Shown here one piece after another: positions 12,512-36,500 of a DNA stretch of 64,000 nucleotides. Positions within the stretch are counted from its first letter, which is position 1, and the number at the start of each line of letters is the position of its first letter. This DNA comes from Bugula neritina (taxonomy: Eukaryota; Animalia; Bryozoa): positions 17,638,633 through 17,702,632 of the forward strand of contig OZ037769.1 of assembly GCA_964035545.1 (NCBI GenBank). The letters are read 5' to 3'. The position numbers and the translations under genes were made by a program. Under the pieces are notes generated by a model, which had not been told where the DNA came from, did not search any database, and was given only the letters and a program-made list of their open reading frames with translations.

Positions 12512-15500
12512 ATGACGATGACCCGTTACGGACGACTGGACGCAGACGTTGCAAGTTTACTCGGAATCGACAGGTTGGCTGTGCAACACTCAAAGTGATC
12601 ACTTGCAGTTATACTTATAGTTATTGTGAATGCTGAAAAACTGCTTCCCAACATGTTATAACTTTTCAACAAAAAAAGGTGGGTGTTGACTAGCTCTGAA
12701 CTTAACATTAAAAACTTGCAAGTTTCACCGTCAGGTGAAAGTTTTGTTTAAATTCAATATCAGTTGTTGTATGAGTTAATGTTATCACTTATCAGTATGA
12801 GTATCAGTATCAGTATCTCACCTAGAACTTTCACTTTTACTTTGAGTTTGATTCTGATTTAGAATATAATTCAATCAGATTGTCCTTGAGATTCACTATG
12901 ACTATCGGTATCGATCACTAGGAGTAGAGTGGCCCTTCACTTTGATTCTCAGCAATGTGAATATAAATATTACAGTTACTGTCAGCAATATGAAATATGA
13001 ATAAGTTTAACTAGTGTAATTATTATTATATCGTGAAACTGATTTATCATTTAATGATTTGTCACTATCTGACTGATTTTAATTTATTTCACTGTTTGGA
13101 ATTAATGAGCTGCTAACTATCCGTGTGACTATGAGTATGATTATGTTGAACAAAACATTATAAAAGAAAATAATTTTTTAATTTCAAATAACTTGCAACT
13201 TGTAGAACAGAAGATTAAATTACGATGAGTTATGATTATTATTATTAGGTAATATAGATTAATAATTTTGTTAAATAAGAGAATTTGGATAGTAATCGTG
13301 ATTAAGTTTGTGCAATTTAAATTAATGAAAACATTTAGTTAGCCTTTGTGATGGCAGTAAAATCATTGGCATAGTAAAAAGAAAACTTTTTGCTAGAAAA
13401 ATGCTTATATGGCTTGGTTTGTATTTGAATTGTTTATTAACATTTATGATTAAATGAATAATTAGCATGTGGTGTGTTACGTATATATCATTTATTGTTC
13501 TATTTAACTTTGTGTAAGGGTTAGCACTAAAGACTACCAATTAGCCTACAGCTTTGGGCATCTGGCAGACAGCAGCATAACAAATGAAACTTTATTGTCT
13601 TGGCTATAATATAAGCTTAGCAATAGAAAAGTGCTAAAACTCCCTGAGCTATCAAATTAGGCACCTGAGCATAAATATGTGACATTTGAAACTTTTGCTT
13701 TATTTGGTGAGCAAAAGAAAGAAAATTTTGTTGAGTTGTTTTTTGTGAAAACATGTTCTTGCACATAATATATCACTGTGTATCGGTGAGTAACTCTTAG
13801 CACCAATGACTGCTCAGCAGCAGGCTGACAGATTCTCGGCCTGCACAGCTGATTTTGTGGTTAATCTCGTATTATCCTGTACAATGGGTTGATGACAGTT
13901 CTAGTTAAGTTGACCATGTCGGTTGGTTCTCTTTTAGCAACTCTTTGTATTGACTATAACAACTTTTCTCATTTGGTCTGTAATTTGGGCTTTGCACAGG
14001 TCACTGAAGTAGTTATCTTTTTTAAACCATTTTGGAATTGTCCTGGTGATATGATCAGGAAAGTATGCTGAGAAGTAATTTTTTCCTACTTTTTCTTAAG
14101 TGGCTTGTTCCTGTATAATCTCTAGGTGGCTGGCAGCATGGATTTAACTTTCATAACGTTTTACTTTACCAGGTCTTGCCATAGAGTAGCAATTTTCTTA
14201 AGCCAATTTCAAGTTAGAAATAGCTGGCTTCATAACATCCTAAAAATCACTTCCCAGTTCTCTGCACTACTGCAAAACCAAACCTAATTGCTGCTGATGT
14301 TATATGTTAGTACTGTTTAGTTGGATAGATGTAATATACATTCACCATTCAGCATAGTAGAAAGGGTAGAATATGAGTTTATAGACATGATAAATTTGGG
14401 TGGTGGATTATGCCACCACTGCTTACTTAGGTTGTGTAATGTTATTTTATAAAGTATAATATTATTTTATAAAGTATACTCTATGCTGTAAATATATACA
14501 TGAGACACTCCTGAAGAGCAGATACAATGTAATACATCAATATGCTGCTATTACTTTTATATGGTCCATTTATCTATTAATATGTCCATTATCTATTATA
14601 TTATATAGTTTATACTCTCTATTATATTATATAGTTTATATTCTCTATTATATTATATAGTTTATATTCTCTATTATATTATATAGTATATATTCTCTAT
14701 TATATTATATAGTTTATATTCTCTATTATATTATATAGTTTATATTCTCTATTATATTATATAGTATATACTCTATTATATTATATAGTTTATATTCTCT
14801 ATTATATTATATAGTTTATACTCTCTATTATATTATATAGTTTATACTCTCTATTATATTATATAGTTTATATTCTCTATTATATTATATAGTTTATATT
14901 CTCTATTATATTATATAGTATATATTCTCTATTATATTATATAGTTTATATTCTCTATTATATTATATAGTTTATATTCTCTATTATATTATATAGTTTA
15001 TATTCTCTATTATATTATATAGTATATATTCTCTATTATATTATATAGTTTATATTCTCTATTATATTATATAGTATATATTCTCTATTATATTATATAG
15101 TTTATATTCTCTATTATATTATATAGTTTATATTCTCTATTATATTATATAGTTTATACTCTCTATTATATTATATAGTTTATATTCTCTATTATATTAT
15201 ATAGTTTATATTCTCTATTATATTATATAGTTTATATTCTCTATTATATTATATAGTTTATATTCTCTATTATATTATATAGTTTATATTCTCTATTATA
15301 TTATATAGTTTATACTCTCTATTATATTATATAGTTTATATTCTCTATTATATTATATAGTATATATTCTCTATTATATTATATAGTATATATTCTCTAT
15401 TATATTATATAGTTTATATTCTCTATTATATAGTTTATACTCTCTATTATATCATATAGTTTATATTCTCTATTATATTCAGTATATATTTTCCTAGAAT

Positions 15501-18500
15501 GTTGTTTAGAGACATAAAAAAACTGCCTATGCACAACATACTTTGCATCTGTTTAGTATCTCGTAATTACACATAAAAAAATCAAAGCCAATTATAAGGC
15601 AAAAGACCATAATACTGTACTATCATTGGATAGTTCTTCATCAATAAACAGGTAGTCGCCAGTGGTGGATATGAACCCCTCCTAGATGTTTCTCGTACTT
15701 CTTCCTCAAAAAACATTTTCATTAAGCCAAAAAGAAATAACAATACACCTTTTTAGTTGACACTTTTTAATTTCTGACTGATATTTCACCTTATTTCCAA
15801 TTATAATTAATTTTTAACCGGCACTTTTCTTTGTAGTAATTCCTACCCTTTAGACTGTGTACTTTGAAATGAGTCTGTTTTACTCGTTACATAAAGTATA
15901 GTTGCACTGGCTACAGGTTGACACAAAAGCAAGCCTATCTTGATAAAATCATGCGCAAATGTAGAAACTATCGAGGAGTTTGTTCCTCATAATTAGAAAT
16001 TGACAAATTATTTTTAATCCGTTTAAAAGCATCTGGTTAGGGAAGCATATGCCGTGTTCAATTTGTTATTCTAGCATTAACAATAACAGAATGCAATAAT
16101 TATAAGTTTATGAGAGTAATTTGTTTTCTTTCTAATTACAAATATAATATTTTAGTATAATATATTATTGTAAATTTATAAGGCTTGCATTAGGAATAAC
16201 GCAGCTAAAACATCATTTTCCTTAAAGCCTTAAAAATATATAAGTATAACATAATACACTATGCCGATAAACTTATTAAAGTATCAAGCAAGCTTAGCTA
16301 GTTTAAGAAAAATTACACTAGGTAAATTACCATTATTTATAGAATGCTTGCTGATATTAGCTTTTGATGTAATTAAAGTAAATTATTATTTATCTTTCTA
16401 GCTAAGGATTTCTCGCCGTAAGTTTTGCTTTTATGCATGGAGAAATGTCGTAACAAACGAGTTAAATTTTTATAGCACATAAAAATGTAATCTATAAGTC
16501 GAAGATATTTAAACTTGGCCATTAACTCATTTTAATTAGAAATGTAGCCTAAATCTAATACAATACAAAATATATACCAGTATATATAATATATTTTTAC
16601 CATGCTGGTAATTACAGTATTTGTAAGACAAATTTTATGCTCATTAATTAAATGCAACAAATATTTATAAAATACTAATAATGTTGAATAAATAAATTCA
16701 ATAATTCCTTTTCTATTTAAATGGCTGCATAATTTCTTGCAAGGTTGTATAAAGGAGTTGTGGCCCACAACTTATTATGTGTTCAATTGCCACATATGTC
16801 TTAGGAAGAAGAAAACTCCCCAAAAATTCTTAGTTTGAAAATTCTAGTATAATTAAAATCACTTAATATATGTCTTTGAAATGCATTTTGCCACTCTGCA
16901 AAGTTGCAGGAACAAATATTGCATGAAGTAATAAATGATTTATGAAGTAATTAACAAACCAATGTAAAAACTGTTGTTGTATATAGAACACAACATATTG
17001 ATTTTCTTCAATTTCCACATCAAATCTATATATTCAATTATATCTAACCAATGCTAATAAACTAAACATGCATGCATACAAATATTTGCATCATATGCAA
17101 GTAATATTAGCTAATTAGCAACTACAGCATTTTTTTCATTATCTTTATTGCTTGCATATGTCTAAGTATTATTAAAATAAGGTTTTTATTTGCAACTTTG
17201 CACCACAAATTACATATAATCTAAAAACTTGAGTTGTGACATAGGGCTACCTATACACAAATAGACCTTCATAAAACTCTCAATGATTTTATTCAACTCA
17301 TGTATGCAAAAGTTTTGCTTTAAAACAATTCTTCTAAATCACCCTAGAGCAGGAAATTATTACAAAAACAGCTTCTCATATATAATCTTTCCCCAGATTA
17401 ATTTTTTTTCCTGTATTTAAACTAACTTAGCAAGTGAAGATTGTGATATCACTCAGGTATAATCACATATATATTATTCATAGCTGTAATACTTTAGCAA
17501 TGAATAGATCATGTTTAATTTCCACTCTACCTAGCAGTTTTTCAGAATTATAGAGCTATGTATATCGTGAAATTGGAATAGCCTAATAGTTTTACATGTG
17601 TTTATAGCTAGTCAAGCTAACTTCAAAAGCTTACAATAATTAGATGATATTTGCATTCTTTTGAAGGTTATGGTGAAGCTACTGCAAAACTGGCCATTAG
17701 TTTAGCATAATATGCAATGCCACGCAAAAGCATGCCAAACAAGCAATGTTTATTTACCTTACCAGCGCAATTTTATCACCTTAAACACAAAAGCAAGTAT
17801 AAAATACACATCCATATTAGATTAACTGTCAAGTTAAAAAAAGACAACATATATTCATGAGCTAGTTCTGTTTGCACAAGTACAATTTAGACCAGCTTAT
17901 TATTTAGATTGCCACAAGAATATGACATAAAATATGTCTTTAATCATTATTTTGATATTCACTGGTTGAAGATATTTTTTATATCCTAATATGTAAATAT
18001 TGTACATAAATCTTAAAAATTAACTAGGTGAATAAGGAAAACTGCTAATTTTATGAAACTGTTATGTTAATAAAGACAATGGCTATCAACAAATCCCACC
18101 AGACCACAAACTAATTGTAAATACTAAAGCAATTATATAGTGCTATGTGTTGATCTAGCCTAGTCAATACACCACAAATATGTATTATGACATACCACAT
18201 TTTAAGTACTGGGTTACCATTTATTCTAATGGGTATTTGTTTAAACTGTTATATACAGCTTTTTGCACTACCAATATACAAGCCAGTTGTTATTCTGTCA
18301 CTTTTTATCTACATCTCTTTTTAATGCCAGTTACTTGTTAGCTTCAGTACAAACAGCTAAACATTCTACTCTACAGCCAATCTTACTGTTAACTCTTGTT
18401 TAACAATATTACAAGAATCTAAAAATTTGAGTGTGTTTTAAGTATAATATTCTATCATTATAACTTTTAAATGAAACAATAATATGATAAATGCATTATA

Positions 18501-21500
18501 ACTTTCTGAAAAGTTTGTTTGCAAAGTATATGTTTTTGGAAAATAGTTTTACAACATTTGCTAGGAGCATTATATTTATTCCTATCTAAAATAATTTTGT
18601 TTGAACTGCTATGTTTGTAATCATGTAATCAGAAGTAAAGCATCAGTAAAATGAGTATAAGTAGAAGCTTGACAGCTACATTAGGCATTGCTACATAGTA
18701 CATAAATGTATGGCCGTATTAAATACTTAGCTGCATTCACAGATAAATGCATGGCTTGGAATTACAATACCATGAATACATTATTTATTTAGCTGGGTAA
18801 CTATACAATTATGCCAAAGTGAAAAGCCTTTGGTTATTAATGCCTGAAATGTCTAACAATCTACTTGGGAGACCACCTTGTTGTTACAGAGTGAATGAGT
18901 TATTTGTTTGGCATTTGGATGATGGCACAAAGAAAGGCTATTTGGTTTGTTACTTGAGACTAGTAGCAAACTGCTACAGTCATAGCATCTTAGAAGATTT
19001 TGCATCACTTGCATCACTGCGTACATTATTTTAATGTAGCTATTGAAATTAATATCTCACTGAAAACACAGTATTGCAAAATCTTAAGCTGTACATAATT
19101 ATATTATGCATCAAAAAGTACTTCTGCTATTCGACTATCCCAGGTTTATTTTAAACTAGCACTGCCAAAGTGCCTTGACTCTATTACACTGTTTACTAGC
19201 TAATTTTGTTCTTCTCAATAGTGAAATAGATCTATTGCAAGAAATTAATGACTAGATATAACAATAATGATTTTTAGGCAAGACTTTCGCATCTATATTG
19301 CTCATCTGCTAGCTTGAAATACCCCTCTCCTTGGACTAATCTCAGGCATTTCATTGTTGTTTAAACAGTTTTTAAACTCCTATTTCAATAAATCATTACC
19401 AACACTGCCTGCATGTATTAATATTCATTAGTGCAGTCAATGCACTGTGGAGACAGCACCTGATGTTCTGTATATTACATTATAGTACAGAGATACTAAA
19501 TCCAAAACATCTAAAATAATTGATGCTTCTACCAGATTTTTAGCACACCTATAATATGTATTCCTGTAGTAAATATTAATAAGATGTTTTAACTGATAGT
19601 TTTTATGCCATTATAATAGTTAGATACTATAACTACAACTTGAAACTCTTTAACCAGCACATTGGTTAGTAATATTGCTTCTTGATATTTAATTGCTGGT
19701 TCACAAACTATCAATAATAGGGATGCATATCAAAACTTGACTGCATTCATAATATGATTTTAATGCTATGTAATGACTAAGCATGTCTGGCTGATATGAA
19801 TGAGGTGACTATTTTGTACACTGTTTAACAACATCAGCTTTTTGGGTTCATTTAAAGCATCTGCAAATCTGTATTATACATAATTACTGTTAGGGCCCAT
19901 TAATTAAATTGTTAACCCTGAAATGCTTTTTACACTGTAATACTAAGTAGCAAAAGACATGTATATATATATAAACTGATTGTAATTTATACATAACATT
20001 GTACATTTAAAAAAACTCACAAAATACATAATTTATTAGCTAAATTTCAAGGCGTTTTGTAGGTAGTGGGTTAATGTCAATAAAGTAGAATCCGGGAAGT
20101 TGAGTAGCTTTATTCAAGAGGAAGGCTCTCCAACAGTTCTACCAAAGCCTAAATAACACGTATAAAATAAAGGTTATATGCACAATTTTTTTTCCAAAAC
20201 AGCCTGCAACTGTTTTGCTATTGCATATGCCCTATGCCATTCATCAAGTGGAACAATTTTAACCAGGATATCTAGAAAAGTTGACACAAGGGCTTTATAA
20301 ACTATGTAACAGTAAAACTGTGAGTAGAAATTAATTGACACTAATGAATAATGCTTTAGGTGCTGGCAACAACCATAAAAGAAAAGTTATATAACAAACA
20401 AATAGAAAAAGCACTAAACAAATCAACAGCATTATATACAATTGGGGCACATACATGAAAACAGCAGCTAGTGTCATTTTCTTAAGACAGCACTATTTTA
20501 GGTGTAAATTTGAGAAGTATTAGAAAATGCAGAAATTTACTGCAATTGGTTCATTTTATTTAAGTTAGTACATACTGAAGATCTCAAGTTTTTGCTAATG
20601 AACATGAGTTTTGGCCCGAAACTAAAAAAATATCAATAAATACACCTAAATAATCAAGGCTCTTTTTAAGTTTCTTTGATTTCCTATGCTTTTTTTCTAA
20701 TTACAGCAACTTCTGACTGGGGATCGCCACGGTTAGTTTGTAACAGTAGGCAATCCAAATGAAATGAATAAATAGGAAAAAACATGAGAAATCATGCAAA
20801 ATTAAGAAGAACCTTGATTATTTAGGTGTATTTCTTGATGTCTCACTAATTTTAAGCAAAAAGCATTGTTCATTAGCAGCTAAATTGTAAAAATGGCTAA
20901 AAACTGCAGATTTCCAGTGTGTACTAAATTAAATAAAAGGACTCAATCACCTTTGCAACATAATTCAATAATTGCATGGTCAAGCAGAATAAACTACAAT
21001 TAACAGCAACAACAGTGTAATAGTTGCGTAGAAAAGTTGTACTGCAAAAAACTAAAAGAATGCAAAATCTATAAATGTGTGCTACCAAGTAAATGCTGAA
21101 CAGACATCATGAAATAGTGTACGAAATACAAACTATTAAACTTACCTGTTGATCTAATGCAGCCAAAACCTTAAGCTTAGAGTAGTGGAATGGTGCTGTT
21201 CGATGTTGATACGCTACAAGTAGCTAAGATGACTCAAATTCTTGCCTTTAGGAGTAAGAGGCCTCAGCTCAGTTTCAACAAAACTTCCAATAATCTCAAC
21301 GGATGCGCTCAATTAGGAGCCACAACAAAGCACACCCATGTCATTTTAGTAAACTCTAAAAAATGAACGGAAATAAAACTGTTAGAGAGTAAACAGAGAA
21401 ACATATAGTGATGGGGGAAAAACCTGTCAGAAAAGGTTATATACACTCATAGTCATAACACGAAGAAAAAGATAATGAATAACAAGCTATTCAAGATGAC

Positions 21501-24500
21501 ACAAGAAACCAAACAAATTTCTTTGACTAAAAAATATAATTAAATACTATATTACTTGGCAAAAAATATTTGTTTTGAACAACGTATTATTGGGAAGAAT
21601 TGCCAGTGTCTTAAATTTTGAGATTAAAGTTTCTGCCTTATAGCGGAAATAGAGAGGCAATCAATAGTGTACAAAACATGTTTTCAGTCATTGGCTGTTG
21701 ACTAAATTGACAAAGGTAAAGAAAGCTTCCATATCATTATTTATTTTGTTCTCAAGTGTGTGGTTACAGTTTCATGAGTCAGAAATATAATTATTTGAGA
21801 TATGAAATCAAATGTAGTCAAAAGAGTGTCATACAATTTAAAATGTAGTAATAGAGCTTTGACAATAATTTCTTCTGCTAAGTAAAACAGGTACCATTAT
21901 GTGCTACTTATCTTTTAGAGATGAACATCAAGGATGTTGAAAACAAAATAGTTGTAAATTACAGCAAATACCTTTCTACTTACCTAACCAGAGAAAATAA
22001 GTTTTCAACCTTGCATGCACTCAGCTGGTTTTCAATTGTTTGGATCAGTGACATCTTTATAACTGATAGCAGCATTATGTGATAGCTTTAGGAATTGTTA
22101 CCTTAAATCTAAATTATATAGAACAAGAAGTGCAAAAATATGGCATTAGTACTCATTGCACAATACACACTTGCTAGAGTAGCTAATCTAGCATCACATT
22201 AATTTAAGAAAGACAAAATTTTTTTTACTGTTCACAAATGATGAATATTAAAATTTGAATAATTAGACAAATTAACAATGATATTGATGTTAGTTCAAAC
22301 ATTACTAATGGTAAACACCAAAATACTAATAGGAATAGTCATGTTAACATTAATTAGAAAAGTAAAGATAATTTGAAAATGAGACAGTTTATAGGTCTAA
22401 CTCTTACAGTTGACAAGCAATTACAGGGCAGTCATATTGATGTAGGCTACCCTCAAAATGTAGCACTTTAAAAATATTAAAAAGACAGCACATATAAGAA
22501 CATAATCTTAAAAATAGGCATATGTGACGCCTATATTTTGATTAACAAAGAAATCTTCTTTACTTTATTAATCTAGCTCATATAATGGTATTCTGTCTTA
22601 GTATGTTATTTTAATACTTGAAATCTAATCAGCTACAGAAAAGTACTTCAATTCAAAGGCCTTCATAATTATTCTTTAGTTTGCTATTTAAATAGACAGT
22701 AAGGTTGATGAATAAAATAAAAGTTAGTAAAGTAAAAACTAAATAAATTGAGAATAATATCTCCACTCTAAGGTTATAATCCTTATAAATTAACATTTTA
22801 ATACTCCTGTTATCCTTAGGTATAGTTGTTAGCAATTTAACTATGAGCTCGAAGCCAAATGTCAGTATCAGCATCCCCATTACATTGACTAAGACTGACT
22901 TTATAACCCTCAAGCTGTGGCACTCAATTTCTATAAGTAGTAACTAATAACAAATATAAAATTATTTATTTGCTACTGATAGTGATAATAATTAAAAATA
23001 ATAATATGATCCATTAAAATAGAACTAATAAAGCCAACGACGTTAATGGTATGTCTAACTAAACATGGCATGTCTCGTCTGGCGGTGGGTATGTGGAGGA
23101 CCAGGCAACCTACGGCCGTCAACCCGTTACTGGCACAACTAGAAGAAGATACTCAAGAGAAGACAACAAAGTTGTCATGGAATGCTACTTCAAAAGTACA
23201 CCCAAATTGAGAGGTTATAGAAAAACAATGTATGAGCTCTGTAGACCCGGATCAAAGAATTATTTAAAAAGAATGTGCAAACGCTGGAAAACAGAGGAGA
23301 GTTTAACATCAGCGAATAGAGACTAGCGGATTAAGCAAGAACTATGAAGAAACACAAGCATTTTATGGAAGAAGAACTCCATAAGATTGAAGAAGGAACC
23401 TTGCAAGAACTAGGCACATCAATTGGTGAAGAAGATAATGAAGAGCTAAATTTGCAAATAGAGGATGTTATAGTACAACATGAGATAGCATATAAATCAG
23501 CCATGAGAATTTTAAGAGTACCTAGTTCAGAGGTAGAAAAAGTGTTAGTAGAAAAATTATAAATGAGCATAACAAACTATCTAATGATCGACCAACACTA
23601 AGAGCCCTTAGGCACATTGAGAGGGTCAAATTACTACAGGCAGTAAAACAGATTAATGATGTGCTAAACTGTGTTGAGATTATTAATACCATTGAGCTTA
23701 ATAACACCACCATGGCTTGTGCGAAAAATGGTAACAGAACAAGTGTGTAACAAAAAGGAAAAAGAAAAACTGACAATGTACAAGTATGGAAAATACGACT
23801 GCAGAAGAAATAAAAAGAAATTAGATCAGACTTAAGTAAAATAGCAGAGTGAAAAAGTAGAGCTTACAATGATTCATTGAGAAGAATGGTTGAAGAAAAA
23901 TATAGGATAAAGAACAAAGAGTGTGGTGTAGTGATTGAAAAACTGAAGCAAAACCTGAGAGCTGTAAGCCAGAAGATAAACAGATATACAGAATGAGTTG
24001 ATCAATATAATCAGAACACAATGTTTACAATGATAAGCGCTTTTATCAAGAATTACGAGGAAATGAATGTACATCTAAAGAGGCACCTGACAAGGAAATC
24101 AAAAGCATTCTGATAAAATATATGGGGTCAGCCAACTAAAAATAATACCAATGCAGAATGACTAAATAAAGTTAGCAACAAATTGGAGCATATGTAAAGA
24201 CAAGGAAATTAGATCTTAGAAACGATGCAAACAACTGGAATAGCAATTAATGTCATAAGGTTGATAAGAAAAAGCATGAAACCTGGAAAACACAACTGAA
24301 ATACCTGGAAGAAAAGATAGGAAAAATAAAGATCAAACTAAGAATTTTCCAAGGAGACTCTTTATCTCTATCCCTTTTCTCCAACTACCGATTCGCATGA
24401 CAGAAGCGGCTCAATGATGCAAATTTCGACGAGACAGAAAACAAACCATCTCCTATATGTGGATGACCTGAAGGTAAATAGGAAATCAAAGTCAGAACTG

Positions 24501-27500
24501 GAAGCTTTGGTAAACACTGCCGGGATCTTCACAAGGAATATAGAAATGAAATTTGGATTAAAAAATGTGCCACACTGGTTATGAGAAAGGGAAAGAAAAT
24601 CAAGGACACAGGAATCAGTTTGCCTGATGAACAGGTAATCAAAGATCTGGGTGAGAAGCCGTATAAATATCTAGGAGTTCTTGAGATTGATAGAATACAA
24701 ATATATGAAATGAAAAATAAGATCAAGGAGTACTACAAACAAATAAGAAAAGTTCTGGATTCAAAACTGAATGGTGAGAACACAATCAAAGCAATAAACA
24801 CATGGGCAGTAACAGCAGTGCATTACACAGCTAGAATACTTGACTGAACTGTTTCATGAGCTAAAAAATATGGACTGAAAGACAAGGAAGCTAATGACAA
24901 CAAACCGTGCACCCTATCCGAGAGCAGATGTAGGCAGGCTGTATTTTAGCAGAAGGGAAGGCGGTAGAAGAATGTTGTCAACTGAAAAATGCATAAAGAT
25001 TGAAAACTGCAGCATGTCAGACTACATAAATAAAACATAGACTGATAAAAACACCACACTGAATACCTTCCTAAAAGACAAAACGGCGGTAGAACTAAAT
25101 AATGATAAAGTGATAGAAAGAACTGATGAGTGTAAAGAAAAGCTTCATGTGGTCAATACATCATCAAAATGGTGGAAGACATGAAAGCATTTTCCTGGAA
25201 CTGGTTGAAGTATGGTTGGCTGAAAAAGGAAACAGAAGGACTGCTGACAGCTGCGCAAGATCAACTATTCACTACTAGAAATTATAAAGTGGCTATGGTG
25301 AGAGAACAGGGTAGCAAGAAGTGTGGAATGTGTAACGCAAGAGACAAAACTTCGATGCACGTATTGAGTGAGTTTGAGAAGGTAGCAGAAGGAGAATATA
25401 TGAAAAAACACAACCTTTTGGCATTGATAATTTCAATAGTAGTTGTGTGAACTTCGTGGGTTTCAGAAAAGTAAGAATTGGTACGGCCATCAAGCAGAAT
25501 CAGTACTGGAAAAGGATAATGTAAAAACCTTGTAAGATTTTAACATACACACTGACGTAGTCATCAAAGTTAGGAGACCCGATATATTAGTAGTTGACAA
25601 GCATAATGCTGAAACAACGATAATTGATATCACAGTCCCTGTTAACTACAGAGTAAAAGAAAAAGATTCGAAAAGTTAGGAAAATATCAGAATTTAGCAC
25701 TAGAATAAACCCGCCTTTGAAAAACATCAAAAAAGTCATCCCGTTGTAACTGGAGCCTTTGGAGTTTTATACAAGATTGTAGACTGGCTGACACTACTTG
25801 GAGTAGCTGAAAACAAATGCTCATTAATTCAGCAGACACCCTTACTAGGATCAGGATAAGCTCACATCCTGAGGAAAGTTCTATCCATTTCAGCCTAGTA
25901 TAACTAGGCCAATGGTAAAAGGTTACACCAGCTAAAAAACTACGGTCAATCAACAATAATAATAATATACAACTATATTAGTACAGTTGGTTCTATTATT
26001 AGATTAGCATATCGATTATGACTTTTCGATTGCCACCCTGATACTATGAGTAAAATGTACAAGCATACGTGAAAGTATAGATATGATCATAAGTATAAAA
26101 ATAGGTATAAGTATAAATATAAATATAGGTACAAGTATAAAACGAATGATTATATTATTAATAATATTAGTTAGTGATACCTATAACCGTAATGGTTTTT
26201 AGACTTACAGTTATCATTAACATTAGCTGAGTAATATGATTAGTTAAAATAATGGTATTCATTATTATATCATAGTTATAAGTTATAACTCTAGTCTCTA
26301 AAGAGCAACAGCAAGTGTAATTGGGATATTCATATTAAATTTCATATTCACATAATGCAATGTTTATGTTATGAACTAATTTATTCCTTCAACATTTAAC
26401 TACAAATATGATTAACACTAACTTTGACCAGCAGTATTACTAAAAGAAGCGTATTACACATATAAGATAATAAAATTCTAGTAGTGGGACTAATAGTATT
26501 ACTAGGTCCGGTATTATTCTTGTTATCTTATTCATCATTCATGAGTTATCAAATTTAAAATTACTACTTATTAGCATCAGCATATAAAAAGTAAGATCAT
26601 TAGGAATAATTATCATGAGGTATGATCTATGATTTGCATTATCCATATATAGTTTAATACCAATATGATATATTATTATTGCTGATAGTCTATGTTATAG
26701 TTAAATTTATACTTATCTTTACAGTTACCTATAGTAGCACTTATTAGTTATTTGTGGTAGCCAAACTAATGTTTAATATTAATAAATTAAACTGAGTATC
26801 ATAAAAGTGTTACTAAGAATTTTAATTATAATCGTAATGGTGATCATATTACTTTATTATAATTATTATATTTTATCACTAATGCTAAACTGAGTTAATG
26901 TATATACTTTGAGTTTTACTATTACTCATTATATTTACACTTATAGTAAAACTAAATATGTAAAAGTTATACTTATACTATTATTATTCGTATTTCATTA
27001 GACTTACATCTAAGATCGCAGTCCTATTACTACTACCACTGATACTAGTACTACAACTAGTACTAGTACTGCTACTAGTACTACTACTACTACTACTAAT
27101 AGTACTGTTACTACTACTACTACTAGTACTACTACTAGGTCTACTACTGTACTAGTACAACTACAAACTTTGAAAATAACTGCAAGAAAGGTATGACTTA
27201 CTCTTTTTCTTAGTCTTACTGTGACTCTCAGTCGTAATGTAAAATAAAATTGTGAACTGTAAAGTTAAACCCAAGGCTGAAATTTATTTAATTAAATTTA
27301 GACAATCTGAATCATTGGCTCAATCCTTGAGTTTGACTATTACTATTATTAATATTATTAGTGTTACGATTGTGATTATCATTGGCATTATGATTAATAT
27401 TATGCCATTATCATTATGATTGTAATTGTGGTAATTCTAACATTAATTATAATCATAAATTAAAAGGTAATGATTAATGATAATTATTTTCATTTTGTAT

Positions 27501-30500
27501 TCATAATGATAATCATAATGATGTAAATTTTGATGTAAAACCAAAATACTAAAACTAAAAGTAAAAGTTATAAAATTAAATGATGAAATATTATAATGAT
27601 AATTATAATTATTATATTTATTATATTATTATTGAATATATTATTTCATTAGAAAATAGGTTGCAGCTTAGCATGATTAAAATTCAGTAAAAATTAGTTT
27701 ACCAACAGCAAACATGCATGCGTCTTGTCAACATTCAATTCGTAGTGCCATAGCGAAGCCAGATTACTGGTAGTACGACTACTAGAACTACTACTACTAC
27801 TAGTGATGGATTACAGATTCTTGGCGATTTTAGCTGTGAGTGACCTTCACCTCACATTCTCGTCATGCGCGCGGCATTAGACTAAGTAGAGGGTATAAAG
27901 CACTGAGCTGGAAAAGAAATAATATATTTTAATTATAGGTAATACTAATAGTAATATAATTTATGGTAATATATAGGTAATATTATTGAGTTCATTGGTA
28001 TGGAGTATAGACCTATCACTGATAGTATCAGTATCAACTACCACTTACGTACTACTTCAACTTATAACTTACCTTCAACTCAAACTGCTTGGAATCATTT
28101 GTCTTTGATAATATTCATATTGGCATTGTCATTGTGATTGAAATAACTATTAATATTTTTAGTTCAACATCAATGCCGAACATATTGTAATAATAAGGTT
28201 GATATACTTTGCTAATACTAATACTAATAGTAATATTAATAGTTATAGTAATTCAGTATCACTCTCACTCTGGTGGAGTGAGACTCAGACTTAGAGTTAG
28301 AGACAGGGTGAGTCCGAGTAAGTCTGAGTGTTGGTAATAGTAATACTAATAGTCATATAAATTTAAATTATATTTACTTATTTCTAGCAATCACAAAGTG
28401 ACAATGGCAATAGTTATAGTAACTTTCACTTACTCTTAAATCATTGAACCTGAACTAAAAGTAAAATTAAGCATTATGATTATGATTATCATTATGATTA
28501 TACCTATGATTTTATTATGTTTAAATTAAAAATTAATATCATGATAATATCATAGTGATGAACATAATGATAAATGATAATATAAAAGTAAATCGATAAA
28601 ATATACATTGATTTTGAATCATGGTGATACTTATACTCGTACCGGTACTGATAGTGATAGTAATACTAATAGTAATAGTAATAGTCATATAAATTTAAAT
28701 AATATTTACTCATTACTGGCAATCACAACGGCAATAGTAACTTAAACTTAAACTGTAACAGTAATGGTATGGGTATGTTTGAAATTGTCACCATCAGTAT
28801 TGCTATGAGTCAAAATATAATGCTATCATACCAATAATTTAAAATAGTATTACAAAGCTTCATTTGTAACTTTTACTTGTACCAATTTGGAATTTTGAGT
28901 TATACATATTCTTAGTTAAAGTTTTCAAGTTTGTTGTCAAAATGAACTTGAAATTAAACACTCAGTGGTAAAAATTAAACTAAGACTGACTGTAAGTGAC
29001 TAAAATTAAAAATAAGTAATTTTAAATATCGATTGAGTATTTTTCTTACTCTTTGTCTTAAAATTGATTTTTTTTTTCTATTTCCATTACTATTGCTATT
29101 AGTATAGTTGACTTAAATTTAATAATAGATATAATTATATCTTTATAAATGTGATCTTTGATTTTATGAATAGTAATTCGAAAACTCTTTGTTATTATTT
29201 ATTTTTGATCATTGTAGTTATTATCATTATATTTGTATAATAATTATGATTATCAACTTCAATATCGATATTTGTATCATGATATGGATATCTGCCTCCA
29301 TCCCATGTTCCATCCCATGTTCTATTTTGCAGTGCCTTTTTACATTCCTGTCTAGGTTCACATTGCGGTGGTCATACTGATAGCACTTGGGGATAGTGAG
29401 GAGCATAATGATTATCACTAATATTAAGATTATCGTTATTAGGATTTAGAATAATTTAATAAACAAGCAACTTAAAGCAAATGTTTTTACTAATACAAAT
29501 ATTAATTAATAATATAAATATAATACTATGAATATTATAATTATTATACTTTACAATTCAAAGTAAGATAATCATAATACGAACTGGTAAAACTAAATAT
29601 AAAGTAAACGTAATAATACTAATAGTAGTTATTCATTCTTCTTTGGTTTCACATACTAATAATTGAAAACCTCTGTCCTAATATTATTTCTATTATTATT
29701 GCTCAAAGTTTGATCCCCACTTAATTTTATAGTTCATTCACCAGCTACATAATTTTATTAAAATACATGTGGTATTAGTTATAGTAATAGTGAAACTTGA
29801 AGTTGAATAGCACGCTTATTACTCACTGCTTTTTGCTTACATTATTAGGGTTACTCTTTAGTCTTAGAGATACCCTAACATAAACTTGAAAGCTGGAGGT
29901 AGTACTAGTCTGGTGCTGTGTTAATCCTACACTGTTGACTTATCAACACTGTGACTATAATTATGACTCCTAAGTCAAAGTCATTTTCATATAGTAGTAA
30001 TCACTATGACAGACTGAAAGTCAGGATGATTAAATATAATGATAAAGTGTGTAAGAATAAATCATAATTCTTCAATTATAAAGATAAATGGATAAAAATT
30101 GCAATCATAGTTTAATGTGCCTATTTTAAGCTGTCAATTTAATTACTATAATATAAGTGCCCAAAGTACAACTTTTGATTTTCATAATTATGTTTTAATT
30201 TAATACAGATACCATAGTATCATATAAGGTAGAATCAGTTGTATCTTATTTAATAATAAAGTAACTTTTTGCAGCTTTCACAGTTATTAATTATTCACTT
30301 GTTAGTCTTTGAACTAGGACAATGTTAGAAACTTGAAGTAGAATGAAGTTTGATTTCAGTTACCGCAATGGTATCTGCAGTCACGATAGGGATATGCATA
30401 TAACTATGTTTATATTTGTGAAAAATATATAGTCAAAACTAGATAAGGTAATAGTAATTATAGTTAGTTTCACTTTTAATATATTCCTATAAACTGGAAA

Positions 30501-33500
30501 ATAGACAGAAGCATTTAATCATGAAAGTAAACCTAATGGAAGTAAATCAATTCACTAAGTATAGTAAAATATTTACTATTCAGTGAGTTTATTTACTTTA
30601 GTTAATTGTACTTGATTATTTCTGTTGGTTTTTCAGTTGGTTTTTCTGCCTTTTGCTATAGCATATCAAACTACCACAAAGTCATGCTTCACTATTACAA
30701 TGTTAAACATAGTGTTACTGTGTAATGTTATCGTAATGTGATAGTAATATTTGGATCATTGTAAGTGTTTCTGTTGTTGTACTGATTGAAAAATATTTTT
30801 TAGCTTGCATGGATATTTAATACCATCAAGGTGTCATTTGAACTGGGACTGGAATAAAGATGGCAAATCGAGAAGCTAGCTACAATTCTTCTGCAGAAAG
30901 AAACTTGGTAAGCAAAAATAAGCTGCAGCATAAAGCAGTAAGCGAAATGGCGATGAATTTTGCTTGATTTTGATTGACCTTAAAATGTCTGGTCACCTTT
31001 TACCGCCGTGGTCCTGCGCGGTTGGCGGGTGACCTTAAAATGTCTGATGCACGTAAAATAAATTTCGTGACAGTCAAAAGTATGCTGATCTTTTTTGTAT
31101 TTCAATGCATCGGTGTCTTAGCTTAAGAGCTGAACCCAACAATTTTGATTTAAAGCTGTTTTTTACGAGAAAGTGATTTTACTGTCTTTCTGATTATTCT
31201 TGGTTTTTCAGCTTGATGAATTGAATAAATGGAATTGATTTCGGGTATTATGTAATGGATGAAAGAAATTTTTCTTAAATTTGTACTGAGCAATTTTTGC
31301 TATGGCTATGATGTTTAGTGATAAAATTGCACCCTTAATAACCCTGAAAACTTTCATTACTAGCATTTGTTTATGTTCATTTTTAGGAAATTAAAACGAA
31401 GACACAACTCACCGATGCTATCTCACTGTGCCTGCATGCAGCTTATCTAAAAAGGTACTCCTATTAGCTGGCTCTTGCCCAATACCTGGTTGTCTCTGTA
31501 ACTATTTTTTGCTCGCAGATGAGTTTTTTGAACTTGACATTTTATTGATTTTGAAAGTTATAGTGAGCTTTGAACTTGCTAGCATCGTTTTTAAAGACTT
31601 GCTGCAGTTTTTATCAACATTTTTTAAGTCAATGGTGTTAGTTTGGAAGCTCTCTCACTCCTCTCTCTGTCTCTTTCTCCCACTCCTTCCACTCAACCTC
31701 TCTCTCTTTCTCTCCCTCTCTCCCACCCTCCCTCTCTCCCACCTTCTCCCTCTCTCTCCCACTCTCTGTCTTTCCCACCTTCTCTCTCTCCTAACCTTAC
31801 TCTCCTCCCTTTTCCACTATCTCTCTGACTCTCTCCCTTTCTCTCTTCTACCCCATCTCTCTTCCATCCTCTCTCCTAACCTTTCTCTCCCACCCCCCCT
31901 CTCCCACTCTCTTTCTCTCTCTAGTTTGCATGGCTTTACCCAATTTTGGTTTATTTTGTTTCAGAGTATCCAAAAGGAAAGCTAAAATTTATTTAATATA
32001 TATTATACTAACTTGAGCTTTACATATAACATCAAATAAATGCTGTGTTTTGTTAAAACAATGTTTGCAACTTTGTAGTATATTCAAATTCATAATTTAT
32101 TTGTAGAGTCACACAACAAGACACTACTCTGACACACTCACAAGTTGCCACTGATCCAGCAGTATAGATGATTGTTTTCTCCACTGGCTATGCTGTCACG
32201 CTTTACTGATGTGGTGTTTGAAACAATCCAATTGTTTGCCTACGCAGACTAGGGTGAGAAAAAAAGTGAGAAATGAAAGCTGTTTTTAACACCAACTACA
32301 CTTAGTTTTTATTGAATGAAAAACAAAGTGAAATCATTAGTTATCAGTTAAATGACTAAATCACTGTTTATAAAGATGAAACACAAATAATCTTATAATA
32401 TGCTAATGAAATTTGGCTTTCAAATAGCTTTTTTCTGTATATTTGTTGAGGAAGTTTATCTTCAACAAAACTTCGTAGCTGTTGAATATGTGGAGAGTAT
32501 TTTATGTTGCATAAATTTATAGAGTAAAAGGTTCTTATCAAACTTTTACAACTTAGCTCATCTACGGTTTAAAAGTGTGAGTCACCCTTCACACTAGAGT
32601 TTTATAAAGTTTTAATGAATGTGCAGTATTTCATAAAATATTGTGTGTCTCGTAAATTTAGCTATTTATACCTTTTCAGTGAGATTGGAGTAAACACACC
32701 TCAAAATTCACATCTGGTATCACATTGATCTATCGCAAGTCAAAGTACACCTACTAACTCGTCCTTCCTTAATACCTGCTTGCTTTTGCACTTCTACTCA
32801 TTTCATATACGTAACATTTCTCTTGCAGATGAATTACATCTTTTAAGTTGTAAAAGCCTTAAATAGCATGAAATTAATGAGGTTTAAACCGTGGCCACAC
32901 TAACTATTGATGCGTTTATTGATGGGTTAAATTACACGAAAATATTGTCTCTTTCTTTTTAGTTTCACCTAAAGTATTACATACTATTGATGGAGGCTTT
33001 GCTGAAGTTATTGGGTGATGATTTGTCAATACTTTTCCAGAGAAGATGATGTCACGGTGGCTGGCGTCATTATGCAGTTTCCAAATTTCTTTCGGGCTTG
33101 CTCTAGTGAAAATGTTGGAAAACAATCAACAAAAAGGTTTGTACCATAAACGAAGTTATTGTGTGCATGTTGCCAAAGCATAAAGTGTGCCGGACATTTT
33201 TAAGTTTCTGTTGAGTTGCGTTGATGCTTTTCCTGCATGAAAAAAGTTCCAGTTTCAGTTAATATCACTTGCCGAGTACCCACCTATGTTTTAAATCATA
33301 TTGATGCATAAGTTCTTTTTGTAATATTTAAAGTATAACTTGCCAAATTGCTATTCAATGCCCATTGAAGTTTCCAACTGTAATTAATTAGTTGATTTGG
33401 CAGCATAGTATCGATGATTGATGAAGGCAGCCGATATAATTATAAGCATAAATATCTATATCTACATGAAGATGTCATTCCCAATGATTGTTATTCTGAA

Positions 33501-36500
33501 ATCAGCTGATTAAGTTATCACAAACTAAACATTTTGACCAGCGGCTTTTACAATGCAACTCGGTGAAATTTTAGACCTAGATGAATTGAATTTCTTACTG
33601 AAAATCGTGAAGGTATTAAAGTTTAAAGGGTCATCTCTCTGCGAATTCTAATAGCATGGTGCCAATTAGACTTGAAAAAATTTCAAGGCACTATAAAGCA
33701 CTAAGCCCATTCTTACAAGTAGTTTCAAAATGCACTGGAATTTCAGTTTACTTGTCATTGTATAGAATCCTGATCTACACTATATAGCATTCACTATTGC
33801 CTGCTTCTTCTAAGCATCTATAATGTATTAACTACAGTTTGCTTTGAATTTCTACTTGGTATTTTTTCCTTATCGTTCTGTTGTTTGCCAGTAGTCTTAA
33901 TTTAATGGATTTTCCCTTTTCAAAAGTGGTTGTGACAATCAAACACATCATGCAGCCTGCAACTACACAATCAGTCAGTAATTTCTTCCATTAAAGTAGC
34001 TCTTCTGGTTACTCTTGTTCACCTAAAAGCCTGAGCCTCATTCAAATTGCAAGTTTTTAGAGTTGGTAATTTTTCATGCAGTCTTTCATTTTTTTTTTTT
34101 AGGCACAAAATTAGTATTCACTAGACCTAATCTTTCATCTGCATGTATGCCTATTGTTTGTTCATTAAAGAAAAACCTCTGCTGAATATTGAACTAATAA
34201 TGAAAACGAATTCCCTAAACTAAAAGTAGCAGTGTGATTTTGGTATTACAATCAGTTGTTAGCATAGAGTCAAGTTATTGACAGGAATTTTCATATTGAA
34301 ATAAATGAATTTCATTGTAAGTCAGCAAGATTTAGTCTAAGTAAACATAGCATTACATCATGTTCTTATTTAACATTGGTAGAAGGCAACATTTATTTTA
34401 AGGACTGTTGTAAACTTAAATGTAATTTTAGGTACTTTCCATGTTTGTTATTGTAGATGGTCTTGTTCTTTGGAATGGATGTGACAACTCCTTGTGTCAA
34501 ACTTAACTGATTGACTACTGAATCCCAATCATGTTTTGCCAAAAAATGTGAAAATGGAGTGCATGTCTACTTTATTTGAGAAAATATTAAAAATACTTTT
34601 GAAACTTCATCTAGCCAAACAATACAACAGTTTCATTTTATTAAAAAACATCATTTGCCCAAAATGTATTATGTAATCGAACAATTTCTAGAAAAAAAGT
34701 GCTTTCCTCCAGTTTTGCTAATGAATTACATATTTCATTACATGCTTGTCTTTATAATTTTATTAATTGTTTTTTCTGGTGAGTCAATTAAAGTCAATTC
34801 AACCTAGAAAAGTCTGAATTTCAGACTTAATTTCAAGCTAGAATATTCACATTTTTAGGTCTGCGTTTGCAAACATTGTTGTGTTACTTTACTTTTTATA
34901 TTTTTTGAAATAAATATTTTTTTAGCTTGTGCCTATTCATGATTAGAATAGTATAATAATATTTAAATTTTCTTCAATTTTAATAGATGAAAATTTTGAT
35001 CAGTTGGAGTATTCAGTTTAGCTGAATTTTACTTGCTTCTGCGAAAACAATCTTTTGGAGTTGTCTGCCCTCTCTTTAGGTAATTTTTTGACCTATGGTC
35101 AACGCAATAATTATAACTTTTTAAAGATGCTTGTGAACCTAACAATATAGCACAACTATCAAACCACATTATTTATTCAATATCTGCATAAAATTTAGCC
35201 AATAATCTGCCACCCAATGAGCTTGAAAAGATATTAGAATTCTAGCTCAGTGCTGCCATCAATGTAGATATTTATATTGATATAAAGCCAAAACTCATTA
35301 TTTATAATGATATAAAGCCAAAACTCATTATTGCATGAAATTATCTAACCATTCCTGACGAAGAATCGAGATAATAACTCCAAAGTTGGTCAGTTGAAAC
35401 CACAGCAATAATACTTTAATCCTTATAATTATCAGGTTTAATTTTATACCAAGCCCCAATAAGTACATATCACTATGACAACACAGCCTAAGCACCTCCA
35501 ATGCAAGAAATTTAGTATTGTGGTGCTACAAATCCTCCAGTTACAAATGAGTAGAGCTTTCATGATTATTGGTCTACCATAATGTTTATTTAGCTGTAGG
35601 GACTAGCATAAATGCTATTATATGTGGGAGGTATTTGAAAAGCTTCCAACTCCATCTTCAACTACGGGCTATTATAATTATGCCGATAAACGAGATACTA
35701 CACTCAGACTGCCCTGTTATAGTACTATGATTGGCTACTGCAAAATTTTTGCCGATAGACAACATTTATTTATGATGTAATGTATCTCGTATTGGCACAT
35801 AAGTGTTATGTCTGAAGACGAGATACTGTGAAATTATGCCCTGATTATATTATATAGTTTATACTCTCTATTATATTATATAGTTTATATTCTCTATTAT
35901 AATATATAGTTTATATTCTCTATTATATTATATAGTATATATTCTCTATTATATTATATAGTTTATATTCTCTATTATATTATATAGTTTATATTCTCTA
36001 TTATATTATATAGTTTATACTCTCTATTATATTATATAGTTTATACTCTCTATTATATCATATAGTTTATATTCTCTATTATATTATATAGTTTATACTC
36101 TCTATTATATTATATAGTTTATACTCTCTATTATATTATATAGTTTATACTCTCTATTATATTATATAGTTTATACTCTCTATTATATTATATAGTTTAT
36201 ATTCTCTATTATATTATATAGTTTATATTCTCTATTATATTATATAGTTTATATTCTCTATTATATTATATAGTTTATATTCTCTATTATACTATATAGT
36301 TTATATTCTCTATTATATTATATAGTTTATATTCTCTATTATATTATATAGTTTATATTCTCTATTATATTATATAGTTTATATTCTCTATTATATTATA
36401 TAGTTTATATTCTCTATTATATTATATAGTTTATATTCTCTATTATATTATATAGTTTATATTCTCTATTATATAGTTTATATTCTCTATTATATTATAT

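What the first reader, a model, noticed from the sequence alone, without database searches (positions are those of the whole stretch)
15472..35851. 20.4-kb transposon-like element defined by mirror-image arrays of a 21-bp site rather than by a perfect TIR
Seen: one 26-bp array is split, with ATTATATT duplicated on both sides, and the insert starts CAG and ends CTG. The ends are only ~59% identical (42/71, ungapped). Yet a bipartite motif, approximately GTAT(C/G)T(C/T)GT-N5-(G/C)(A/G)CATAA, sits at exactly the same offsets from each end. Left copies: 15497-15517 (offset 17), 15521-15541 (offset 41, inverted), 15556-15576 (offset 76). Right copies: 35806-35826 (17), 35782-35802 (41, inverted), 35747-35767 (76), plus an extra copy at 35678-35698 and a partial one near 16260. 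Known: 8-bp TSDs occur in the hAT, P and Zisupton superfamilies, subterminal transposase-binding sites are typical, and some THAP domains bind GGCA-containing sites. Inference: this is a very large non-autonomous cargo-carrying element whose ends keep binding-site geometry while the spacers drift. Ordinary TIR finders would probably miss it, and it may be an undescribed family. I found no transposase in it.
Basis: partly seen in the sequence, partly recalled or inferred. Interest (0 to 1): 0.82.

Follow-up and report, generated by a model that had tools for sequence, protein, structure and literature searches.

The report
Giant gene-less transposon with modular ends
The 20.4-kb insert is one of roughly 80 near-identical copies of an unusually large jumping-DNA element that has no gene of its own and is defined by two 119-bp end modules carrying the same layout of protein-binding sites; the enzyme that moves it was not found.

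Summary
A 20,364-bp insert (15480-35843) splits a 26-bp satellite, is flanked by ATTATATT on both sides, starts CAG and ends CTG. It carries a bipartite 21-bp site at offsets 17, 41 (inverted) and 76 from each end.

It is a real DNA transposon. Both ends have more than 80 near-identical matches in this 216-Mb animal genome, homology stops exactly at CAG, and 8 of 9 paired copies have their own perfect 8-bp duplications. The site gives 233 genome hits against 0 for the control.

The "cargo" reading fails. The whole 20 kb is the family's fixed sequence, made of non-coding DNA and a decayed retroelement. No transposase domain was found in 60 open segments, nor by whole-genome hAT, KDZ and P profile searches.

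New here:
- Each end is a discrete 119-bp module.
- Left-type modules also occur alone at three other loci; one is flanked by an exact 8-bp duplication and one by a near-exact one.
- The right end carries a second, inner end 127 bp in.
- Insertions prefer a 14-bp palindromic target that is not hAT-like.
- An active hAT and a KDZ element in this genome have unrelated ends.

The superfamily and the mobilising enzyme stay unresolved. This scan already found the same family several times on other DNA.

The parts
14588..15479 (.). left part of the 26-bp satellite array that was the target
   Evidence: Tandem Repeats Finder, period 26, 34.6 copies
15472..15479 (.). left copy of the 8-bp target-site duplication ATTATATT
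15480..35843 (+). the element, 20,364 bp, CAG...CTG; a typical full-length copy of the family (modal size about 20.4 kb)
15480..15598 (+). left end module, 119 bp: 17-nt tip, three sites, GCCAAT box, ending ...TATAAG
   Evidence: homology with the solo modules at C2, C9 and C3 stops at base 119
15497..15517 (+). site L17 (GAATGTTGT-N5-GACATAA)
15521..15541 (-). site L41, inverted (GTATGTTGT-N5-GGCAGTT); forms a tail-to-tail pair with L17
15556..15576 (+). site L76 (GTATCTCGT-N5-CACATAA; GACATAA in most copies)
15587..15592 (+).
16260..16272 (+). isolated partial site (13 nt identical to the second half plus spacer of the extra right-end site)
20545..20947 (.). 403-bp internal fold-back (imperfect palindrome), part of the family sequence
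23063..25447 (+). frameshifted remains of a retroelement (a YVDD-like stretch; weak RVT_1 match, E 0.06, below cut-off)
35678..35698 (-). extra site Rx (GTATCTCGT-N5-GGCATAA), the first site of the inner end
35699..35716 (-). inner pseudo-end: tip CAGGGCA (same 7 nt as the outer tip) followed 18 nt in by site Rx
   Evidence: the only other exact CAGGGCA in the insert has no site
35717..35724 (.). 8-bp spacer TTATAGTA between the inner end and the outer module
35725..35843 (-). right end module, exactly 119 bp, same architecture as the left module (about 60% identical)
35747..35767 (-). site R76
35782..35802 (+). site R41, inverted; intact in only 11 copies genome-wide, GTATCTTGT-type in most
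35806..35826 (-). site R17; with R41 a near-perfect 45-bp palindrome
35844..35851 (.). right copy of the target-site duplication ATTATATT
35844..36527 (.). right part of the 26-bp satellite array

Best explanation
Window 15480-35843 is a full-length copy of a young family of about 75-90 non-autonomous DNA transposons of 20.4 kb in an AT-rich animal genome. Shown: precise CAG/CTG boundaries shared by all copies, a different perfect 8-bp target duplication at each copy, and one fixed 20-kb interior without a recognisable gene. Inferred: a transposase made elsewhere binds the bipartite 21-bp sites (a 9-nt half GTATCTCGT / GTATGTTGT, 5 free bases, then a 7-nt half G/C-R-CATAA). These sites stand as a tail-to-tail pair at 17-61 and a third site at 76-96 in each 119-bp end module. 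The enzyme would pair the two modules, cut at the CAG tips, and insert with an 8-bp stagger into an AT-rich, 14-bp palindromic target (T-V-T | M-A-W-W-W-W-T-K | A-B-A). The two halves of a site are unlike each other, so one protein probably reads them with two DNA-binding parts. The superfamily is unresolved. My split is KDZ/Zisupton-like about 0.3, hAT-like about 0.3, P-like about 0.1 and something else about 0.3.
For: Both 201-bp ends give 84-91 candidate matches, and all 40 scored matches are 99-100% identical. Flanks differ from the base before CAG at all 58 distinct ends read. Eight of 9 coordinate-paired copies have perfect, distinct 8-bp duplications and sizes of 19.4-24.2 kb. The full length is collinear at 93-99% identity in other copies. 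The strict site has 233 genome hits against 0 for the control; on contigs C1-C5, where the list is complete, every hit lies in a family end except one duplicated relative. Half-site positions are conserved between the left and right ends while the spacers are at the random level. Five flank positions deviate from background at p of 0.003 or less. No Pfam transposase domain appears in 60 open segments of 50 aa or more. Six-frame genome searches with hAT (PF05699), KDZ (PF18758) and P (PF21787) profiles put no hit inside any family copy. There is no Rfam or tRNA hit.
Against: No transposase was tied to the sites, so binding is inferred from the layout alone. Exons under 50 aa or a gene family absent from Pfam could be missed. 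No empty site, excision footprint or polymorphism was seen, so cut-and-paste as opposed to a copying mode is not shown. A search for scars holding both tips found none. The lower diversity of the first 200 bp cannot be used, because the loci were chosen by that very similarity.
Confidence: 0.85

Rival explanations
1. The family is a KDZ/Zisupton-type element moved by one of the giant KDZ transposons of this genome.
For: It has an 8-bp duplication, as Zisupton does, and CA..TG termini with little or no inverted repeat, as reported for Kyakuja (PMC12730594). The genome holds five intron-rich KDZ gene copies and four or five intronless ones. Earlier scan notes describe 17-32-kb KDZ elements with 8-bp duplications here, so giant size is their habit.
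Against: No KDZ profile hit lies in any family copy even at E up to 10. No strict site lies near the KDZ genes on C2 and C5. The one KDZ element whose ends I read (17 kb, with a helicase) has a 19-nt inverted-repeat core and subterminal motifs unrelated to these modules. The ends of the five intron-rich copies were not read.
Confidence: 0.3
2. It is a hAT-superfamily non-autonomous element (a giant Ds-like derivative).
For: It has an 8-bp duplication. The tips are CAG, and the right tip CAGGG fits the hAT YARNG rule. The inverted repeats are short and imperfect, with subterminal repeats as in Ac/Ds and Tol2 (my own knowledge). Hits to the hAT dimerisation domain exist at 14 places in the genome, among them three identical copies with a 563-aa open frame.
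Against: The target logo prefers A at position 2 and T at position 7, the reverse of the Ac-type nTnnnnAn, and shows no central TA as in the Buster type (consensus from my own knowledge). The left tip CAGTA breaks YARNG. No hAT domain lies inside any copy. The active 3,047-bp hAT has the inverted repeat CAGGGTTGGGGT, GTAATTG-type subterminal repeats, a canonical duplication CTTACTAC, and no site scoring 9 or more in the 1.2-1.3 kb read on each side of its coding region, which takes in both ends.
Confidence: 0.3
3. It is a P-superfamily element moved by a THAP9-like transposase.
For: It has an 8-bp duplication inside a 14-bp palindromic target pattern, the geometry known for P (my own knowledge). 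Four THAP9-like RNase-H hits exist, the best at E 2e-33.
Against: No scar holding 9 nt of each tip within 30 nt exists anywhere in the genome. None of the P-like hits lies in or beside a copy. The target is AT-rich, whereas the Drosophila P target is GC-rich.
Confidence: 0.1
4. Composite origin: the 119-bp modules are the real mobile or cleavable units, and the family was born when two of them came to bracket about 20 kb of ordinary non-coding DNA. This is like a macrotransposon made of two closely linked Ac/Ds ends. It would be compatible with any of the enzymes above.
For: Left-type modules occur alone at three independent loci at 85-89% identity, with homology ending at base 119. In C9 the module is flanked by exact TATTCCGT on both sides, and in C3 by CACTACAT / CACTA-TA-CAT. 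The right module is also exactly 119 bp and is followed by 8 bp and then a second, inner end. The interior holds satellites, a fold-back and a dead retroelement but no transposase relic.
Against: Only three solo loci exist, and all are old. The inner terminus of the module does not resemble a tip. Solo modules could instead be relics of repair or deletion. The third solo locus (C2) shows only 5/8 flank identity.
Confidence: 0.2
5. The element is autonomous: an intron-rich gene with short exons is hidden in the 20 kb.
For: Other transposase genes of this genome are split into exons of about 60 aa that ORF lists miss (and earlier notes).
Against: Sixty open segments of 50 aa or more gave only sub-threshold noise. 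Only 2 ORFs of 90 aa or more exist. Three transposase profiles found nothing in about 80 copies. GC is 24-36%, with long low-complexity tracts.
Confidence: 0.05
6. It is not a transposon but a segmental duplication, a higher-order satellite unit or an assembly misjoin.
For: Copies are clustered, for example at least 12 within C3:14.8-15.8 Mb, and two pairs share flanks (L007/L009, L021/L022).
Against: There are 58 different flanks, exact common boundaries and copy-specific 8-bp duplications.
Confidence: 0.01

Closest known systems
Ac/Ds and Tol2 (hAT superfamily) non-autonomous elements
   Same: 8-bp target duplication, CAG tips, short imperfect terminal repeats, and repeated transposase-binding motifs in roughly the first 100-200 bp of both ends; moved in trans.
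   Different: It is about ten times larger than typical Ds, with a single fixed 20-kb interior. The sites are 21-bp and bipartite, not 5-6-bp repeats. The target logo is the reverse of nTnnnnAn. No hAT partner with matching ends was found.
Zisupton / KDZ transposons
   Same: 8-bp duplication (Zisupton), and CA..TG termini with weak or absent inverted repeats (Kyakuja) (PMC12730594). Giant KDZ elements are active in the same genome (earlier notes).
   Different: No KDZ relic lies inside. The one KDZ family whose ends were read has unrelated ends.
En/Spm (CACTA) subterminal TNPA motif arrays
   Same: Works alike in layout: a motif of about 12-21 bp repeated in direct and inverted, tail-to-tail orientation in both subterminal regions (my own knowledge).
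   Different: CACTA elements make 3-bp duplications and start CACTA; this element makes 8-bp duplications and starts CAG.
P element
   Same: 8-bp duplication centred in a 14-bp palindromic target pattern; internal binding sites set back from the tips.
   Different: No 31-bp inverted repeat, an AT-rich target, no P-type two-tip excision scars, and no P-like gene associated.
Maize Ac/Ds macrotransposons (two linked ends moving the DNA between them)
   Same: Would explain a gene-less interior bracketed by two small, self-contained end modules.
   Different: Macrotransposons are one-off events. This one became a stable family of about 80 copies. The composite origin is only a hypothesis here.

Membership tests
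DNA transposon, non-autonomous (trans-mobilised) | precise common boundaries and copy-specific target-site duplications | tested here: met
   58 distinct flanks ending at CAG; 8 of 9 pairs with perfect 8-bp duplications
DNA transposon, non-autonomous (trans-mobilised) | no transposase coding capacity | tested here: met
   no Pfam transposase in 60 open segments of 50 aa or more; no hAT, KDZ or P profile hit inside copies; exons under 50 aa not covered
DNA transposon, non-autonomous (trans-mobilised) | an autonomous partner with matching ends | tested here: not met
   strict sites occur only in the family and its solo modules; the active hAT and one KDZ element have other ends
hAT superfamily | 8-bp target-site duplication | tested here: met
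hAT superfamily | terminal YARNG and short inverted repeats | tested here: inconclusive
   right tip CAGGG fits, left tip CAGTA does not; 11/17 tip identity
hAT superfamily | target consensus nTnnnnAn (Ac type) or nnnTAnnn (Buster type) | tested here: not met
   position 2 is A in 34 and T in 19 of 58 flanks read inward; central TA in 8 of 58; the genome's own hAT shows CTTACTAC
hAT superfamily | hAT transposase (dimerisation domain PF05699) in the element or in a partner with the same ends | tested here: not met
   14 hits, none in a copy; the 3,047-bp active hAT has unrelated ends
KDZ / Zisupton | 8-bp duplication and CA..TG termini | tested here: met
   features as given in PMC12730594
KDZ / Zisupton | KDZ transposase (PF18758) or its relic in the element | tested here: not met
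   20 candidates at E up to 10, none in a copy
KDZ / Zisupton | ends shared with an autonomous KDZ element | tested here: inconclusive
P superfamily | THAP9-like transposase in the element or a partner | tested here: not met
   4 hits, none in or next to a copy; their flanks were not read
P superfamily | excision scars keeping about 17 nt of both tips between the duplications | tested here: not met
   0 hits for 9 nt of each tip within 30 nt; shorter remnants not covered
P superfamily | THAP domain binds the subterminal site | not testable with these tools
   needs a binding assay

The most novel reading that the evidence does not exclude
The 119-bp end module is itself the unit that the unknown enzyme cuts or moves. 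It occurs alone with its own 8-bp duplication, and it sits as an add-on outside an older inner end at the right side. On this reading the 20.4-kb family is a composite that arose when two such modules bracketed ordinary DNA, and then spread to about 80 copies through an enzyme encoded by no element with matching ends, possibly a single-copy or domesticated gene.
Probability: 0.2. Interest if true: 0.7.

Novelty: new variant of a known kind. Interest (0 to 1): 0.5.

Why it matters
Non-autonomous DNA transposons that reach high copy number are normally tiny. This family moves 20 kb of gene-less DNA about 80 times with roughly 1-2% divergence, so some enzyme in this animal handles very large substrates efficiently. 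The enzyme seems to recognise them through a compact 119-bp module with an explicit site grammar. That grammar gives a direct handle for fishing out the enzyme by binding assay, one-hybrid screen or profile search for modules. It could also serve as a large-cargo vector system. The case further shows that repeat finders based on inverted repeats will miss such families. The solo modules and the doubled right end hint at how such giants are born.

Tried and rejected
After that only short fetches were possible.
2. C1:33585073-33620608 was a candidate diverged or autonomous subfamily. It is only an older, decayed 35-kb copy with CpG-type changes in sites and spacers alike.
3. 19488-35716 was a candidate nested element, because TTATAGTA+CAG at 19480 matches the 8-bp spacer at 35717. 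There is no end-like homology and the chance level is about 0.07, so I left it as weak.
4. I looked for copies ending at the inner right end. The one candidate (C3:15584361) has the outer module with a mutated first site.
5. Lower diversity of the first 200 bp as a sign of constraint: rejected as ascertainment bias.
6. Non-family strict sites with spacer base 5 = G/T: none.
7. P-type two-tip scars: none.
8. Rfam and tRNA scans: nothing.
9. A 13/14 direct match between left offset about 137 and the right module boundary: judged chance.
10. The Flustra genome paper is a different, much larger and GC-richer genome, so it does not identify the organism. I did not verify the organism myself.
Full report
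1. THE OBSERVATION

The window lies at C5:17638633-17702632 of a 216-Mb, 321-contig assembly. It is AT-rich (24-44% GC) and full of minisatellites. Earlier scan notes call the genome an animal, a bryozoan; I did not verify that.

A 26-bp satellite runs 14588-15479 and resumes in phase at 35844-36527. ATTATATT sits at 15472-15479 and at 35844-35851. The 20,364 bp between them start CAG and end CTG.

The seven copies of the bipartite motif are at the stated coordinates. Their offsets of 17, 41 (inverted) and 76 are identical at both ends, and the extra copy is at offset 145.

Several checks put this above chance:
- With up to two mismatches the pattern matches five times in 64 kb, all within 170 bp of the ends, against 0.84 expected.
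- A weight matrix at score 12 or more recovers the seven sites and one weak hit elsewhere.
- Genome-wide a strict form gives 233 hits against 0 for the reversed control.
- The "partial copy near 16260" is a 13-nt half-site at 16260-16272.

2. IT IS A TRANSPOSON FAMILY

Each 201-bp end finds 84-91 candidates, and the 40 scored for each end are 99-100% identical over the full length. In the 60 loci fetched, homology stops exactly at CAG and the flanks are unrelated, giving 58 distinct flanks.

Nine left/right pairs could be matched by coordinates. Eight of them have perfect 8-bp duplications, all different (for example CTTGGTAA, CGAAAATC, CAGCATTG), with sizes of 19.4-24.2 kb. The duplication is therefore 8 bp and no longer only "modulo 26".

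The whole 20 kb is collinear with other copies at 93-99% identity. Interior diversity among copies is about 1-2%. Site coordinates on C1-C5 give a modal length of about 20.4 kb. Larger copies (up to 41 kb) carry later insertions, and one 11-kb copy is deleted.

Copies are clustered: C3:14.8-15.8 Mb, C1:32.9-35.3 Mb, and C5:14.6-17.7 Mb, the last near the contig end.

This scan had already met the family on other DNA (notes s1-444293, s1-451036, s1-453668, s1-456778, s1-444311, s1-457938). Those notes reached the same basic reading: about 75-80 copies, gene-less, enzyme unknown.

3. WHAT IS INSIDE

Only two ORFs of 90 aa or more exist. I scanned 60 stop-free segments of 50 aa or more against Pfam and found nothing above a family cut-off and no transposase. 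The only meaningful trace is a weak reverse-transcriptase match (E 0.06) in a run of frameshifted fragments at 23063-25447.

Six-frame searches of the whole genome gave the following, with no hit inside a family copy:

| Profile | Hits |
|---|---|
| hAT dimerisation domain (PF05699) | 14 |
| KDZ (PF18758) | 20 candidates at E up to 10 |
| P-type RNase H (PF21787) | 4 |

There is no Rfam family and no tRNA. The rest of the interior is low-complexity tracts, microsatellites and a 403-bp fold-back.

"Cargo" is therefore the wrong word. The interior is one fixed, non-coding sequence that belongs to the family.

4. ANATOMY OF THE ENDS (NEW HERE)

- **The ends are discrete 119-bp modules.** The left module is 15480-15598 and the right module is 35725-35843. 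Each has a 17-nt tip (11/17 identical), a tail-to-tail pair of sites at 17-61, a third site at 76-96 and a GCCAAT box at 107/108. In the right end the pair forms a near-perfect 45-bp palindrome.
- **Sites are conserved between the two ends and spacers are not.** Half-site positions are 31/48 identical, while the positions between them are 10/32. The random expectation is 0.285 (Fisher p 0.003). The caveat is that the motif was defined on these same sites.
- **The left module exists outside the family.** It occurs at C2:11835881 and C2:11894721 (one event, later duplicated), at C9:10388928 and at C3:7721265. Identity is 85-89% over bases 1-119 only, followed by unrelated DNA. A pattern for the inner boundary finds just these four places. 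In C9 the 119 bp are flanked by exact TATTCCGT on both sides. In C3 they are flanked by CACTACAT and CACTA-TA-CAT. In C2 the match is poor (5/8). So a bare module has been inserted, or left behind, with its own 8-bp duplication at least twice.
- **The right end is doubled.** After the 119-bp module come 8 bp (TTATAGTA, 35717-35724) and then a second tip, CAGGGCA, followed 18 nt in by the "extra" site at 35678-35698. A copy that seemed to lack the outer module has it, with a mutated site.
- **Only 11 copies keep the exact R41 site.** Most have the GTATCTTGT variant, which still fits the degenerate motif.

5. TARGET CHOICE

In 58 distinct flanks, five positions deviate from background (p from 6e-5 to 3e-3). 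Read toward the element they are T at -11, not-T at -10, T at -9, A/C at -8 and A (less often T) at -7, with an AT-rich core.

Because both ends show it, the target is a 14-bp palindrome: T-V-T | M-A-W-W-W-W-T-K | A-B-A. This is not the Ac-type hAT rule nTnnnnAn, nor the Buster-type central TA (rules from my own knowledge). The genome's own active hAT does show the hAT rule (CTTACTAC).

6. WHO MOVES IT

- On C1-C5 the list of strict sites is complete. No site lies near the hAT genes, the KDZ genes or the one P-like gene located on those contigs.
- A second pattern that filters out the three abundant family site types found only 11 hits in the whole genome, all of the family's own fourth type. 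No other element family with several perfect sites is therefore likely.
- The active hAT is a canonical 3,047-bp element at C5:1591425-1594471, one of three identical copies with a 563-aa open frame. Its inverted repeat is CAGGGTTGGGGT, it has GTAATTG-type subterminal repeats, and no site scored 9 or more in the 1.2-1.3 kb read on each side of its coding region, which takes in both ends.
- I located a 17-kb KDZ-plus-helicase element through note s1-456685. It has a 19-nt inverted-repeat core, its own TGTTAGA-like motifs and the duplication AGACATAG. Its ends are also unrelated.
- A search for P-type scars holding both tips found none.
- The ends of the five intron-rich KDZ copies and the surroundings of the P-like genes could not be read.
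- Literature: Zisupton makes 8-bp duplications, and Kyakuja has CA..TG termini without inverted repeats (PMC12730594). This keeps KDZ as a serious candidate.

7. MECHANISM

Shown: precise ends, 8-bp staggered integration, a palindromic AT-rich target, trans-dependence, recent spread, self-insertion (C3:15604588) and clustering.

Inferred: a DDE-type transposase reads the bipartite sites with two DNA-binding parts. It binds the tail-to-tail pair as a dimer and adds a third site. It then pairs the modules and cuts at CAG.

Open:
- Which enzyme does this.
- Whether movement is cut-and-paste.
- What the solo modules are: a tiny mobile unit, the product of excision between an inner end and the far end, or a repair relic.
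- Whether the family began as a composite of two modules around ordinary DNA. I put that at about 0.2.

8. VERDICT

This is a real, young, orphan family of giant non-autonomous DNA transposons. It is a new variant of a known kind, and this scan had seen it before. This report adds:
- the verified site grammar,
- the 119-bp module with solo copies,
- the doubled right end,
- the target logo,
- the exclusion of two active autonomous families as mobilisers.

Interest is moderate, at 0.5.

Noticed in passing
L065 (C9:10388928-10389046), L066 (C3:7721265-7721388, minus), L063/L064 (C2:11835881 and C2:11894721): Solo 119-bp left-type end modules outside the family. The C9 copy is flanked by exact TATTCCGT on both sides and the C3 copy by CACTACAT / CACTATACAT. 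The two C2 copies share flanks and are one event duplicated 58.8 kb apart.
   Followed up: partly
L070/L071 (C5:1591425-1594471): Canonical, apparently active 3,047-bp hAT element: one of three identical copies with a 563-aa open frame, inverted repeat CAGGGTTGGGGT, GTAATTG/CAATTAC subterminal repeats and duplication CTTACTAC.
   Followed up: partly
L067/L068 (C5: about 10983288-11000354): Ends of the 17-kb KDZ-plus-helicase transposon noted earlier: inverted-repeat core TAGGTGCAGWAATGGAGAT, duplication AGACATAG and TGTTAGA-like subterminal motifs. One tip also starts CAG.
   Followed up: partly
genome-wide: Family copies are strongly clustered: at least 12 in C3:14.8-15.8 Mb, and groups at C1:32.9-35.3 Mb and C5:14.6-17.7 Mb near contig ends. 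This suggests local hopping or accumulation in low-recombination regions. One copy sits inside another (C3:15604588).
   Followed up: no
L007/L009 and L021/L022: Pairs of copies with identical left flanks on the same contig (C7:12.25 and 14.88 Mb; C3:15259280 and 15281229). These are segmental or tandem duplications that include an element copy.
   Followed up: no
L030/L057 (C6:410299-432809): A coordinate-paired copy whose two 8-bp flanks do not match (CATAATTT versus ATAATATG). It may be a recombinant between two copies or a mispairing.
   Followed up: no
window 19480-19496: TTATAGTA followed by CAGAGATAC: the same 8-mer as the spacer at 35717-35724, followed by CAG and a near half-site. It could mark the left edge of an older nested element (19488-35716), but chance is about 0.07 and no end homology was found.
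   Followed up: partly
window 36526 to about 42000: A long 49-bp (149-bp higher-order) satellite directly abuts the 26-bp satellite. The window start (192-2214) is another coding-frame-free minisatellite.
   Followed up: no
window 10027-11989, minus strand: Exons with the look of a carboxylesterase-type gene lie 3.5 kb upstream of the satellite. This rests on my reading of the translated motifs only; no family scan was run.
   Followed up: no
L004, L005, L011/L023, L017, L028, L059: Several copies are interrupted within 1.7 kb of an end by other insertions. L011 and L023 are interrupted at the same position, 680.
   Followed up: no
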